A stretch of 62,447 nucleotides of DNA, the filler included, from Choristocarpus tenellus KU-1152 (Eukaryota > Protista > Phaeophyceae): the NCBI GenBank assembly GCA_964200185.2. It is 13 parts of 13 records of this genome, joined end to end, with 100 filler letters (N's around TTAATTAATTAA, not from the genome) between each part and the next. Parts side by side here need not be neighbours in the genome. Positions count along the whole stretch, not along the records: positions 11,804 to 18,906 come from CAXNAD020006695.1; 12 more parts are not named here. One strand, written 5' to 3'. Positions 16,738-17,305 of this stretch are shown one piece after another. A program made the position numbers and the translations under genes. Position 1 is the stretch's first letter; each line of letters opens with the position of its first letter. A model generated the notes under the pieces. It worked only from the letters and a program-made list of their open reading frames with translations, searched no databases and was not told the origin of the DNA.

Positions 16738-17074
16738 ATAATGAATGCATTCCTTGAACGTTTAGCCCATCTCGAAGTAAGTTCCATTATTGAAGATTTT
16801 GTTGCTTCAAAAGTACTGATATGTTATGGAGTGCATTCATCAAAAGACACGGTAATAATATAGTGCTATCGAGATCATGTGGATCATCGTAGCTAATTCA
16901 GGAGTTAGAGTATGTTTACTACCGTCAATATATTACCTAAACCCCACACCTTTACTAATTTTACGAAGTCTTGAAAAAGACATTACCTGAAATCCCCCAG
17001 AATCTGTTAAGATTGGGTCGAACCAATTCATGAATTTTCTTAATCCTTCCAGCTGTTTAATGATACTTTCTCCG
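16738..17074 (-). pseudogene. tgt: Internal fragment of bacterial-type queuine tRNA-ribosyltransferase (tgt), with stops and frameshifts
   Basis: [49 protein letters not shown]...HDLDST/ITVSFDECTP*..TFEATKSSIMELTSRWAKRSRNAF. Contains the TGT signature TDSGGFQ and FDEC motifs, has no introns, and is AT-rich. Confidence 0.92.
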
Positions 17075-17305
17075 TGCTTGCATCCTTTACTACAGCAAAT
17101 ATTTTATCCAGAGATGCTAGCTTTAACAGTGTATTATCCGATAAATCACATGATGTTCTGCTAGGTAGGATGAATATACAACATTATAGGAAGAACACTT
17201 ACATCATTTATTGCCTTAAAATGTTGGTATAAACCTTCTTGTTCAGGTTTAACATAATTAGGAGTCGTACACATTATACCATCAATGCCCAACTTGCATA
17301 AATTT
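17075..17305 (-). pseudogene. dapA: Internal fragment of bacterial dihydrodipicolinate (4-hydroxy-tetrahydrodipicolinate) synthase, frameshifted
   Basis: [43 protein letters not shown] / [29 protein letters not shown]. Includes the P.Y.KP.QEGL..HF motif, the catalytic Tyr (LY..P.RT) and the Schiff-base Lys (KDAS). A 4-bp duplication (taggtagg, 17162-17169) causes the frameshift. Confidence 0.92.

What the first reader, a model, noticed from the sequence alone, without database searches (positions are those of the whole stretch)
16738..17305. Pseudogenised Rickettsiales-like bacterial DNA (dapA + tgt fragments) embedded in a eukaryotic contig
Seen: a ~570-bp AT-rich, intron-free stretch 1.7 kb downstream of the spliced SET1 gene, on the same contig with no spacer between. 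It encodes internal pieces of DapA (IMLYIHP/SRT...KDAS) and Tgt ([23 protein letters not shown]), broken by two stops and three frameshifts. The ORF track shows only scraps of it. Known: Rickettsiales such as 'Ca. Megaira' are endosymbionts of algae and protists, and endosymbiont DNA can integrate into host nuclei. Inference: the residue pattern (LDSTIT..FDECTP..TFE..KSSM.LT.RWA.RSRNAF; P.YVKP.Q.G.Y.HF...LPIMLY..P.R..D.SD.T.L.L) resembles Rickettsiaceae proteins as I recall them. The decay argues for an old nuclear integration rather than a live contaminant, so this may be a fossil record of an undescribed endosymbiosis in this host.
Basis: partly seen in the sequence, partly recalled or inferred. 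Interest (0 to 1): 0.88.

Follow-up and report, generated by a model that had tools for sequence, protein, structure and literature searches.

The report
Decayed Rickettsiaceae DNA in a eukaryotic chromosome
A 565-base stretch next to a spliced eukaryotic SET1 gene is a broken, non-functional patchwork of two bacterial genes (dapA and tgt) from a "Megaira-group" Rickettsiaceae endosymbiont, showing that this host lineage once took up DNA from such an intracellular bacterium.

Summary
On the minus strand, window 17305-17077 is an internal piece of dapA (about residues 90-164 of 294). Window 17076-16741 is an internal piece of tgt (about residues 73-182 of 360).

The donor is confirmed and narrowed. 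The tgt piece falls inside a well-supported clade of Candidatus Megaera and unclassified Rickettsiaceae genomes. The dapA piece groups at 100/100 support with three uncultured Rickettsiaceae-type DapA proteins. It is 84% identical in DNA (E 5e-65) to the dapA of one of them.

The stretch lies on one contig with a SET1 gene that has a GT-AG intron. A second sample holds it at the same depth as its flanks, with a contig that crosses the right junction. This argues for nuclear integration, not contamination.

Decay is modest, roughly 5-10% neutral change, so "old" is not shown. The host's name is coded, so "undescribed endosymbiosis" cannot be judged.

The kind is already known (rickettsial DNA in the Volvox carteri nucleus, Wolbachia nuclear inserts). 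I rate it a new member of a known kind, of moderate interest.

The parts
17077..17305 (-). Internal fragment of dapA (4-hydroxy-tetrahydrodipicolinate synthase), about residues 90-164 of 294. It includes the VKDAS stretch, which by my own knowledge of DapA holds the Schiff-base lysine. It lacks both ends of the gene.
   Evidence: TIGR00674 E 1.5e-15 and PF00701 E 5.8e-11. blastn gives 84% identity over 229 bp, E 5e-65, to L084 1318-1539 and its equivalents in L082, L083 and L085. Amino-acid identity is 86% to P0161 over 73 columns.
17162..17169 (-). Frameshift in dapA: the 4-nt tandem duplication CCTA|CCTA, which runs into a TAG stop at 17163-17161.
   Evidence: The DNA alignment to L084 shows 4 extra bases exactly here. 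The frame change between pieces A and B is seen.
17075..17079 (-). Mid-gene junction between dapA and tgt. On the minus strand it reads ...GATGCAAG|CACGGAGAA..., with at most 2-3 nt of possible microhomology.
   Evidence: The dapA DNA alignment ends at 17077. The Tgt protein alignment starts at Lys73, 17079-17077. The sequences are compared side by side.
16741..17076 (-). Internal fragment of tgt (tRNA guanosine(34) transglycosylase), about residues 73-182 of 360. It holds the [11 protein letters not shown] and FDEC motifs. It lacks the N-terminus and the whole C-terminal half, which by my own knowledge holds the nucleophile Asp and the zinc site.
   Evidence: TIGR00430 E 2.3e-14 and PF01702 E 1.6e-12. 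tblastn with L001 Tgt aligns residues 73-139 at 73% and 147-182 at 66%. blastn gives about 72% identity over about 300 bp to many Rickettsiales tgt genes, down to 16741.
16933..16935 (-). In-frame stop in tgt (GFR*YIDG, where relatives have FRSHIDG).
16879..16881 (-). 1-nt deletion in tgt (ATCCA-CAT, in the codon for the Gln of ...IQ..LDST).
   Evidence: Frame change seen. The gap is in the DNA alignment.
16854..16858 (-). 5-nt insertion (TTATT) in tgt, between DSTI and TVSFDEC.
   Evidence: Frame change seen. The 5-nt gap is in the DNA alignment.
16824..16826 (-). Second in-frame stop in tgt (FDECTP*, where relatives have Tyr or Phe).
13900..15001 (+). Context: the last two exons of a SET1-type histone methyltransferase gene. 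A GT-AG intron lies at 14048-14661 and the stop codon at 14999-15001. This marks the contig as eukaryotic nuclear DNA.
   Evidence: SET domain PF00856, E 3e-20. The splice sites were read.
17306..17336 (.). Host-side flank directly right of the insert. In other contigs of the same runs, this roughly 30-nt piece is joined to the very-high-copy repeat of 18798-18906.
   Evidence: Joints 17306/17326/17327/17336 to 18794-18813, and extra depth in bin 17236-17356 (247 against 18 in X1).

Best explanation
Window 16741-17305 is a dead nuclear integrant of bacterial DNA. DNA from an intracellular Rickettsiaceae bacterium of the 'Megaira group' reached the host nucleus. The donor was a lineage sister to the uncultured bacteria that carry DapA P0161/P0162 and P0397.

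Two unlinked internal gene fragments were joined head to tail and fixed in an intergenic region 1.7 kb downstream of a SET1 gene. They are dapA nucleotides about 270-491 and tgt nucleotides about 217-546. The most likely route is end-joining repair of a chromosome break, which is also how mosaic organelle-derived inserts form.

Neither piece could ever have made a working enzyme, because both lack their gene's ends. Since then the stretch has drifted neutrally. It has gained two stops, three frameshifts, several in-frame indels and a few per cent of substitutions.

Shown: bacterial origin, donor clade, lesions, physical contiguity with host DNA, and depth equal to the flanks.
Inferred: the end-joining route, the patchwork origin, and the absence of any function.
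For: Family identity of the pieces.

Donor, from tgt:
- The pattern scan of one genome per GTDB species, followed by summed scores of all four tgt pieces, puts 23 Rickettsiales-type loci on top. They score 140-159 bits and 65-73% identity over about 100 aa. Clostridia drop out.
- The maximum-likelihood tree places the pseudogene in a starred (95/88) clade with Ca. Megaera genomes. That clade is sister to Rickettsia/Tisiphia.
- Metagenome loci picked by a universal motif score lower, at most 130 bits.

Donor, from dapA:
- An exhaustive HMMER search of 1.8 billion representatives was followed by two family expansions.
- These gave P0161/P0162 (80-81% by BLAST, 86% over 73 aligned columns) and P0397 (76%).
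- All named relatives are Rickettsiaceae (Rickettsia, Tisiphia, Trichorickettsia, 'Rickettsiaceae bacterium').
- The tree gives 100/100 support for pseudogene + P0161 + P0162 + P0397.
- DNA identity to the dapA of L082-L085 is 84%, E 5e-65.
- Those contigs have 32-34% G+C and Rickettsiales-type content: virB3/virB4, and the block from an Aminotran_4 (class IV aminotransferase) gene through dapA, smpB, a Peptidase_S49 gene and a Bac_DNA_binding (HU-type) gene. They share a 13-gene order with MAG-45, whose tgt is the pseudogene's best tgt match.

Integration:
- The stretch shares a contig with an intron-bearing SET1 gene.
- In X1, one 7,736-bp contig covers 15300-18824 with no differences.
- In X2, another sample, a 754-bp contig covers 16733-17486 at depth 6.39, against 5.7-6.3 in the flanks.
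- No extra contigs at 90% likeness or more lie over the insert.

Patchwork origin: in MAG-45, dapA and tgt lie 20 kb apart on opposite strands. No dapA lies within 3 kb of tgt in 80 genomes, and no tgt lies in the 10 kb around dapA.

Decay: most dapA mismatches fall at third codon positions (22 third, against 9 first and 6 second in the script's count; its last seven mismatches come from a misplaced gap and should be ignored), which leaves little neutral change. For dapA, 0 of 17 clade-invariant residues are changed. For tgt, 7 of 55 are changed.

No further bacterial fragments were found in the flanks.
Against: - Only X1 spans the left junction (16741), and X1 may be the sample the window was assembled from. 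In X2 the contig starts at 16733, and 16605-16732, next to a (GT)n tract, is not assembled.
- All laid data are contigs, not raw reads, so depth is one figure per contig.
- The run types are not on record.
- The tgt piece is much more diverged (72% nt, long tree branch of 1.27) than the dapA piece (84% nt, branch 0.07). I attribute this to the missing tgt of the P0161-type bacterium. A second donor is not excluded.
- The reference set for the tgt tree was chosen by shared 8-residue words, so lineages without such words were not sampled.
Confidence: 0.85

Rival explanations
1. The insert is the remnant of one large insertion. A stretch of tens of kilobases of the bacterial chromosome holding both dapA and tgt entered the nucleus. 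Later deletions and an inversion removed everything but these two pieces.
For: In MAG-45 the two genes lie on one 37-kb contig, only 20 kb apart. Large rickettsial or Wolbachia inserts that later erode are known; one example is the roughly 9-kb insert in Volvox carteri (PMC4324946). The pseudogene carries many small indels, so the locus is prone to deletion.
Against: In MAG-45 the genes are on opposite strands, but here they are on the same strand. This needs an inversion as well as deletions that each end inside a gene. No other bacterial remnant is detectable in the flanks. The junction is clean, with 3 nt of microhomology at most.
Confidence: 0.2
2. Assembly chimera or contamination. Reads of a live or dying Rickettsiaceae symbiont in the culture were wrongly joined to a host contig.
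For: Megaira-group bacteria are common in protist and algal cultures (PMC10132079 and the Ciliophrys preprint). Close relatives of the dapA piece exist as intact genes in public runs. The left junction has no independent contig.
Against: - The stretch carries two stops and three frameshifts and fuses two half-genes. That is not expected in a genome where both genes are otherwise conserved.
- Two separate sample assemblies give identical sequence. X2 crosses the right junction by 181 bp at the depth of the flanks.
- No extra contigs over the insert suggest a second, bacterial copy at 90% likeness or more.
Confidence: 0.05
3. The bacterial fragments arrived as cargo of a host mobile element or virus that had picked them up earlier, rather than directly from a symbiont.
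For: The 30 nt directly right of the insert (17306-17336) belong to a repeated sequence that elsewhere is joined to the very-high-copy repeat of 18798-18906. A 19-nt imperfect inverted repeat (16612-16630 / 17401-17419) brackets the insert. In Volvox the rickettsial insert is also interleaved with host multicopy sequences and a transposon piece.
Against: Depth over 16752-17235 is single-copy in X1 and X2, so the bacterial part itself is not repeated. The inverted repeat is only 16 of 19 complementary, one of six such pairs in 7 kb, so it is probably chance. No transposase or viral gene was detected nearby.
Confidence: 0.07
4. The stretch is a domesticated, functional sequence: an expressed RNA, a regulatory element or a new exon derived from bacterial DNA.
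For: The 115-codon open frame 17161-17508(-) runs from host sequence into the dapA piece.
Against: - That frame's upstream 70 residues match nothing.
- The frame ends at the frameshift.
- The RNA-like run X3 covers 15300-15940 and 18020-18831 at depth 125-232 but nothing over the insert.
- Both enzyme pieces lack essential parts.
Confidence: 0.02

Closest known systems
[quoted passage not shown] 2015, PMC4324946)
   Same: The donor comes from the same broad Rickettsiaceae group. The DNA is integrated in the nucleus of a eukaryote, the gene copies are incomplete and judged non-functional, and host multicopy sequences lie beside or inside the insert.
   Different: The Volvox insert is about 9 kb. 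It keeps 16S rRNA, murB, ddlB and ftsQ in bacterial order, and some of its frames are still open. Here only 565 bp survive, made of two unlinked housekeeping genes fused mid-gene, and both are broken.
Wolbachia nuclear inserts in arthropods and nematodes, and rickettsial sequences reported in the Trichoplax adhaerens assembly (own knowledge, not checked here)
   Same: Both involve transfer of DNA from a Rickettsiales endosymbiont to the host nucleus, followed by pseudogenisation.
   Different: The donor family is different, and the host here is coded and unknown. Wolbachia inserts are often large and recent.
Mosaic NUMT/NUPT insertions formed by end joining at chromosome breaks (own knowledge)
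   Same: Non-adjacent fragments of a donor genome are ligated with little or no microhomology and inserted in intergenic DNA, then decay neutrally.
   Different: The donor here is a bacterium, not an organelle. The repair route is inferred from the structure only.
Intact dapA of the uncultured bacteria on L082-L085 (P0161/P0162) and of P0397 in assembly GCA_024449895.1
   Same: The nearest living relatives of the dapA piece. DNA identity is 84% and amino-acid identity 85-86% over the shared part. They have the same unusual LY(I/V)(H/N)P motif where most DapA proteins have LYN.P.
   Different: Those are complete genes in conserved Rickettsiaceae gene order. The three lineages are about equidistant (84-86%), so none of them is the donor itself.

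Membership tests
DapA, 4-hydroxy-tetrahydrodipicolinate synthase (TIGR00674 / PF00701) | Significant match to the family profile | tested here: met
   E 1.5e-15 (TIGR00674) and 5.8e-11 (PF00701) for piece A; E 9e-5 for piece B. The Pfam score of 42.1 is above the gathering score of 22.1.
DapA, 4-hydroxy-tetrahydrodipicolinate synthase (TIGR00674 / PF00701) | Full-length uninterrupted reading frame reaching the equivalog cut-off | tested here: not met
   Only profile positions 91-163 of 286 are present. The score is 56.8 bits against a cut-off of 206. A 4-nt duplication shifts the frame. This is a gene fragment, not a member enzyme.
Tgt, tRNA guanosine(34) transglycosylase (TIGR00430 / PF01702) | Significant match to the family profile | tested here: met
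   E 2.3e-14 (TIGR00430) and E 1.6e-12 (PF01702, 47.6 bits against a gathering score of 26.3) for piece C. The further pieces are colinear with residues 120-182.
Tgt, tRNA guanosine(34) transglycosylase (TIGR00430 / PF01702) | Complete frame, including the C-terminal half with the zinc site | tested here: not met
   Only residues about 73-182 of 360 are present, with two stops and two frameshifts inside them.
Bacterial (not eukaryotic QTRT1) origin of the tgt piece | Closer to bacterial than to eukaryotic homologues | tested here: met
   For the same piece, Rickettsiales loci score 64-72 bits, Zymomonas-type Tgt chains 38-39 bits, and QTRT1 chains 31-33 bits.
Donor in Rickettsiaceae, 'Megaira group' | Phylogenetic placement of both pieces inside the group with support | tested here: met
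   Tgt sits in a starred clade (95/88) with Ca. Megaera endosymbiont of Nemacystus and Ca. Megaera venefica, and the Rickettsiales label forms one side of a branch (93/78). DapA groups at 100/100 with P0161, P0162 and P0397, inside a starred 30-row clade whose named members are all Rickettsiaceae or Rickettsiales bacteria and which includes MAG-45. Caveat: no row in the DapA tree is itself labelled Megaera.
Nuclear integrant of endosymbiont DNA | Physical continuity with host nuclear sequence across both junctions in independent data | tested here: inconclusive
   The right junction is crossed in X1 and X2. The left junction is crossed in X1 only. All data are contigs.
Nuclear integrant of endosymbiont DNA | Copy number equal to flanking single-copy host DNA | tested here: met
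   In X2 the depth is 6.39 over the insert, against 5.73, 5.84, 5.86 and 6.3 in the flanks. X1 is a single contig at 18.3. Contig depth is a coarse measure.
Nuclear integrant of endosymbiont DNA | Loss of coding capacity (pseudogenisation) | tested here: met
   Two stops, three frameshifts, truncated ends and altered clade-invariant residues.
Nuclear integrant of endosymbiont DNA | Presence in host individuals or strains that lack the bacterium | not testable with these tools
   A symbiont only 84% identical would not have been seen.

The most novel reading that the evidence does not exclude
The host is not a known carrier of Megaira-group bacteria. In that case this 565-bp fossil is the first trace of such an association in its lineage. 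It comes from a so far unnamed Rickettsiaceae lineage that still lives in other hosts: the bacteria of P0161 (runs SRR29999183, SRR29999185 and DRR496536, and assembly ERZ25068762) and of P0397 (inside the large assembly GCA_024449895.1). If those samples turn out to be the same or a related host, the insert would document a long-standing symbiosis whose partner has diverged by 16% in DNA since the transfer.
Probability: 0.35. Interest if true: 0.55.

Novelty: new member of a known kind. Interest (0 to 1): 0.45.

Why it matters
Dead inserts of endosymbiont DNA are durable records of who lived inside whom. This one is small and has no function. It is cleanly attributable to the Megaira group, a clade now being found in algae, ciliates and other protists, and it has a close living relative in public data. 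Three uses follow:
- It gives a marker for surveying related hosts (present or absent, same junctions) to date the association.
- It offers a check on whether the host still carries the bacterium.
- It is a clear example of patchwork capture of unlinked bacterial fragments in a nucleus.

It does not change what is known about the mechanism or about lateral transfer in general.

Tried and rejected
- Extension of dapA up to 17499: a few gapped BLAST alignments ran through the 115-codon open frame. The upstream 70 residues match no profile, and the DNA alignment stops at 17305. Rejected.
- More bacterial fragments in the flanks: tblastx against the Rickettsiales loci, plus Pfam and NCBIfam on all stop-free segments of 35 aa or more in 16000-16760 and 17290-18000, found none.
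- dapA-tgt adjacency in the donor: none in 80 GTDB loci, none in L082-L085, and none in MAG-45, where the genes are 20 kb apart on opposite strands.
- Finding the tgt of the P0161-type bacterium: the 120 best relatives of MAG-45 Tgt reach only 73-77% identity. The best of them (P0308) comes from another sample.
- The ESM Atlas look-up of P0001 gave no useful taxonomy.
- Naming the host or linking it to the bacterial samples: five exact look-ups of window ORFs were not on record. Paper searches for the accession numbers found nothing.
- Rfam and tRNA scans of the piece were empty.
- The inverted repeat 16612-16630 / 17401-17419 was judged chance.
- For the two trees, the broken frames were read through inside scripts only, with X at each break.
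Full report
WHAT IS THERE

Stop-free pieces were given to the profile libraries by reference.
- 17164-17340(-) matches DapA (TIGR00674 positions 91-133, E 1.5e-15; PF00701, E 5.8e-11).
- 17043-17183(-) continues DapA (positions 130-163, E 9e-5).
- 16936-17103(-) matches Tgt (TIGR00430 positions 62-110, E 2.3e-14; PF01702, E 1.6e-12).

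The three shorter tgt pieces give no profile hit alone. They align in order with residues 120-182 of Rickettsiales Tgt.

DNA alignments fix the limits. dapA is 17305-17077 and tgt runs from 17076 down to 16741.

LESIONS

dapA carries two lesions:
- a 4-nt tandem duplication (CCTA|CCTA, 17169-17162) that shifts the frame;
- three extra in-frame bases near 17087-17095.

tgt carries the following:
- a stop at 16935-16933;
- a 1-nt deletion near 16879-16881;
- a 5-nt insertion at 16858-16854;
- a stop at 16826-16824;
- three in-frame 3-nt indels.

That makes two stops and three frameshifts, as reported.

Both pieces are internal. dapA lacks residues 1-89 and 165-294. tgt lacks residues 1-72 and 183-360. 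They meet mid-gene at ...GATGCAAG|CACGGAGAA... with at most 2-3 nt of possible microhomology.

THE CONTEXT IS EUKARYOTIC

The open frame 14594-14998 holds a SET domain (E 3e-20). It is joined to an upstream exon across a GT-AG intron (14048-14661), giving ...EYR|[14 protein letters not shown]. The exons were searched singly by reference, and I did not build or search a joined coding sequence. The stop codon at 15001 lies 1.74 kb from the insert. G+C is 0.35-0.36 in the insert against 0.40-0.46 around it.

No other bacterial fragment was found in the flanks. The checks were tblastx against the Rickettsiales loci and profile searches of every stop-free segment of 35 aa or more.

IS IT INTEGRATED?

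Three coded runs of one study hold the stretch. Laid at 90% likeness or more:
- X1 gives one 7,736-bp contig covering 15300-18824 without a difference.
- X2, another sample, gives a 754-bp contig covering 16733-17486 at depth 6.39. Its flanking contigs have depths 5.73, 5.84, 5.86 and 6.3.

The right junction is thus crossed by 181 bp in a second sample, at single-copy depth. The left junction is crossed only in X1. In X2 the stretch 16605-16732, beside a (GT)n tract, is not assembled.

X3 covers only 15300-15940 and 18020-18831, at depth 125-232, and nothing between. This looks like RNA and, if so, suggests the insert is silent. The run types are not on record. All the data are contigs, so depth is coarse.

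Together with the disabling lesions, this makes a live contaminant or a chimera unlikely (about 5%).

DONOR, FROM TGT

A pattern scan of one genome per GTDB species returned 80 loci. With piece C alone, Clostridia and Rickettsiales scored alike.

With all four pieces summed, the top 23 loci are all Rickettsiales-type. They score 140-159 bits and 65-73% identity over about 100 aa. The best is MAG-45, JAHDGL01. The Clostridia fall away.

A maximum-likelihood tree was built from 43 rows, reading the pseudogene through with X at each break. It places the pseudogene in a starred clade (95/88) of 20 rows. That clade includes Ca. Megaera endosymbiont of Nemacystus decipiens, Ca. Megaera venefica and unclassified Rickettsiaceae genomes. 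It is sister to a Rickettsia/Tisiphia clade.

Other comparisons agree:
- Solved Tgt chains score 38-39 bits and eukaryotic QTRT1 31-33 bits for a piece that scores 64-72 bits on Rickettsiales.
- Metagenome loci picked through a universal motif reach at most 130 bits.

Caveat: the genome loci were chosen by shared 8-residue words, so lineages lacking them were not sampled.

DONOR, FROM DAPA

The exhaustive HMMER search of 1.8 billion representatives gave P0001 as the best hit (65%). Its contig has 33% G+C and dapA directly followed by smpB.

Expanding around P0001 gave named relatives that are all Rickettsiaceae or Rickettsiales. It also turned up P0161 and P0162, which are 80-81% identical to the two dapA pieces. 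Expanding around P0161 added P0397, at 76%.

In the tree, the pseudogene, P0161, P0162 and P0397 form a 100/100 clade. It sits inside a starred 30-row clade of 'Rickettsiaceae bacterium' proteins that also holds the DapA of MAG-45. This clade is separate from Rickettsia, Tisiphia and Trichorickettsia.

At the DNA level, 17077-17305 is 84% identical over 229 bp (E 5e-65) to the dapA on L082-L085. Those contigs come from ENA ERZ25068762 and from Logan assemblies of SRR29999183, SRR29999185 and DRR496536. They have 32-34% G+C, virB3/virB4, a group II intron reverse transcriptase and transposases. They keep a 13-gene order shared with MAG-45.

P0397 lies on an intact 11.9-kb contig of the same gene order, inside a large NCBI assembly, GCA_024449895.1.

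Over the shared 73-74 columns the three lineages are about equidistant at 84-86%. The donor was therefore a third member of this clade, not either living bacterium.

HOW IT GOT ITS SHAPE

In MAG-45, dapA (contig 12-902, minus strand) and tgt (about 21392-22471, plus strand) lie 20 kb apart on opposite strands. No dapA lies within 3 kb of tgt in 80 genomes. No tgt lies within 10 kb of dapA in the nearest relatives.

Two same-strand half-genes fused cleanly are best explained by ligation of separate DNA fragments during break repair. This is inferred, not shown. A large insert later cut down by an inversion and deletions is the main alternative (about 20%).

The 30 nt just right of the insert belong to a repeated host sequence that elsewhere abuts the very-high-copy repeat of 18798-18906. 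This fits a patchwork junction, but it could also point to a mobile-element carrier (about 7%).

HOW OLD?

The script counted dapA mismatches to L084 as 22 at third, 9 at first and 6 at second codon positions; its last seven come from a misplaced alignment gap, and most of the rest are synonymous. This is divergence under selection in bacteria, not decay.

On the amino-acid level, the pseudogene branch has 4 changes against 3 on the P0161 branch. None of the 17 residues invariant in the wider clade is altered. In tgt, 7 of 55 clade-invariant residues are altered, one of them at a frameshift.

Together with seven or so small indels in 565 bp, this suggests roughly 5-10% neutral change since constraint was lost. 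'Old' is therefore not established.

The much lower DNA identity of the tgt piece to any sampled genome (72%) probably reflects the missing tgt of the P0161-type bacteria. I could not retrieve that gene, so a second donor is not excluded.

COMPARISON WITH WHAT IS KNOWN

The closest case is the roughly 9-kb rickettsial (hydra/Megaira-group) insert with 16S, murB, ddlB and ftsQ in the nucleus of Volvox carteri. It is likewise incomplete and flanked by host multicopy DNA (PMC4324946).

Megaira-group bacteria are now known from green and brown algae, ciliates, a dictyochophyte and others (PMC10132079 and the Ciliophrys preprint). Wolbachia nuclear inserts and mosaic organelle inserts are functional analogues (own knowledge).

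This finding is a new member of that known kind.

The host's name is coded. Five exact look-ups of window ORFs and paper searches for the accession numbers did not reveal it. Whether the symbiosis is 'undescribed' cannot be said.

VERDICT

- Age and novelty of the association remain open.
- Interest is moderate at 0.45.

Noticed in passing
window 18797-18906: A dispersed repeat of extreme copy number. Summed contig depth is 6e4-8e5, against 18 for single-copy DNA in X1. Its 5' flanks vary at 18797, 18798 and 18804. Some X3 contigs join it to CCCTAA telomere-like letters. It has no tRNA and no Rfam match. The window's contig ends in it.
   Followed up: partly
window 15300-15940 and 18020-18831: Run X3 covers only these two stretches, at depth 125-232, and nothing between them. 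This looks like transcripts: the SET1 3' UTR and a second unit that overlaps the unannotated 206-codon ORF 17764-18384, which has no Pfam hit.
   Followed up: no
window 11804-11900: A long G-run with occasional T (poly-Gly on the plus strand, poly-Pro on the minus strand if translated) at the piece's left edge. It gave spurious tblastx hits.
   Followed up: no
L082 11418-15847: In the P0161-type bacterium, virB3 is followed by a short VirB4 N-terminal ORF, then a group II intron reverse transcriptase (RVT_N, RVT_1, GIIM), then the rest of virB4. The type IV secretion gene virB4 appears to be split by a group II intron.
   Followed up: no
P0397 contig in GCA_024449895.1 (no DNA held): An intact 11.9-kb Rickettsiaceae-type contig, running from an ABC-transporter gene and the LptD_N- and LptC-family genes through dapA, smpB and a Peptidase_S49 gene, sits inside an NCBI assembly too large to fetch. 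That assembly is probably a eukaryotic genome carrying an unreported Megaira-group symbiont or a large recent insert.
   Followed up: partly
window 16612-16630 and 17401-17419: A 19-nt inverted repeat, 16 of 19 complementary, brackets the insert at about 100 bp on each side. I judged it chance, as it is one of six such pairs in 7 kb.
   Followed up: partly
P0349: A Tgt 77% identical to that of MAG-45 is deposited as a protein of the rotifer Rotaria magnacalcarata. This is another eukaryotic assembly carrying Rickettsiaceae-type sequence.
   Followed up: no
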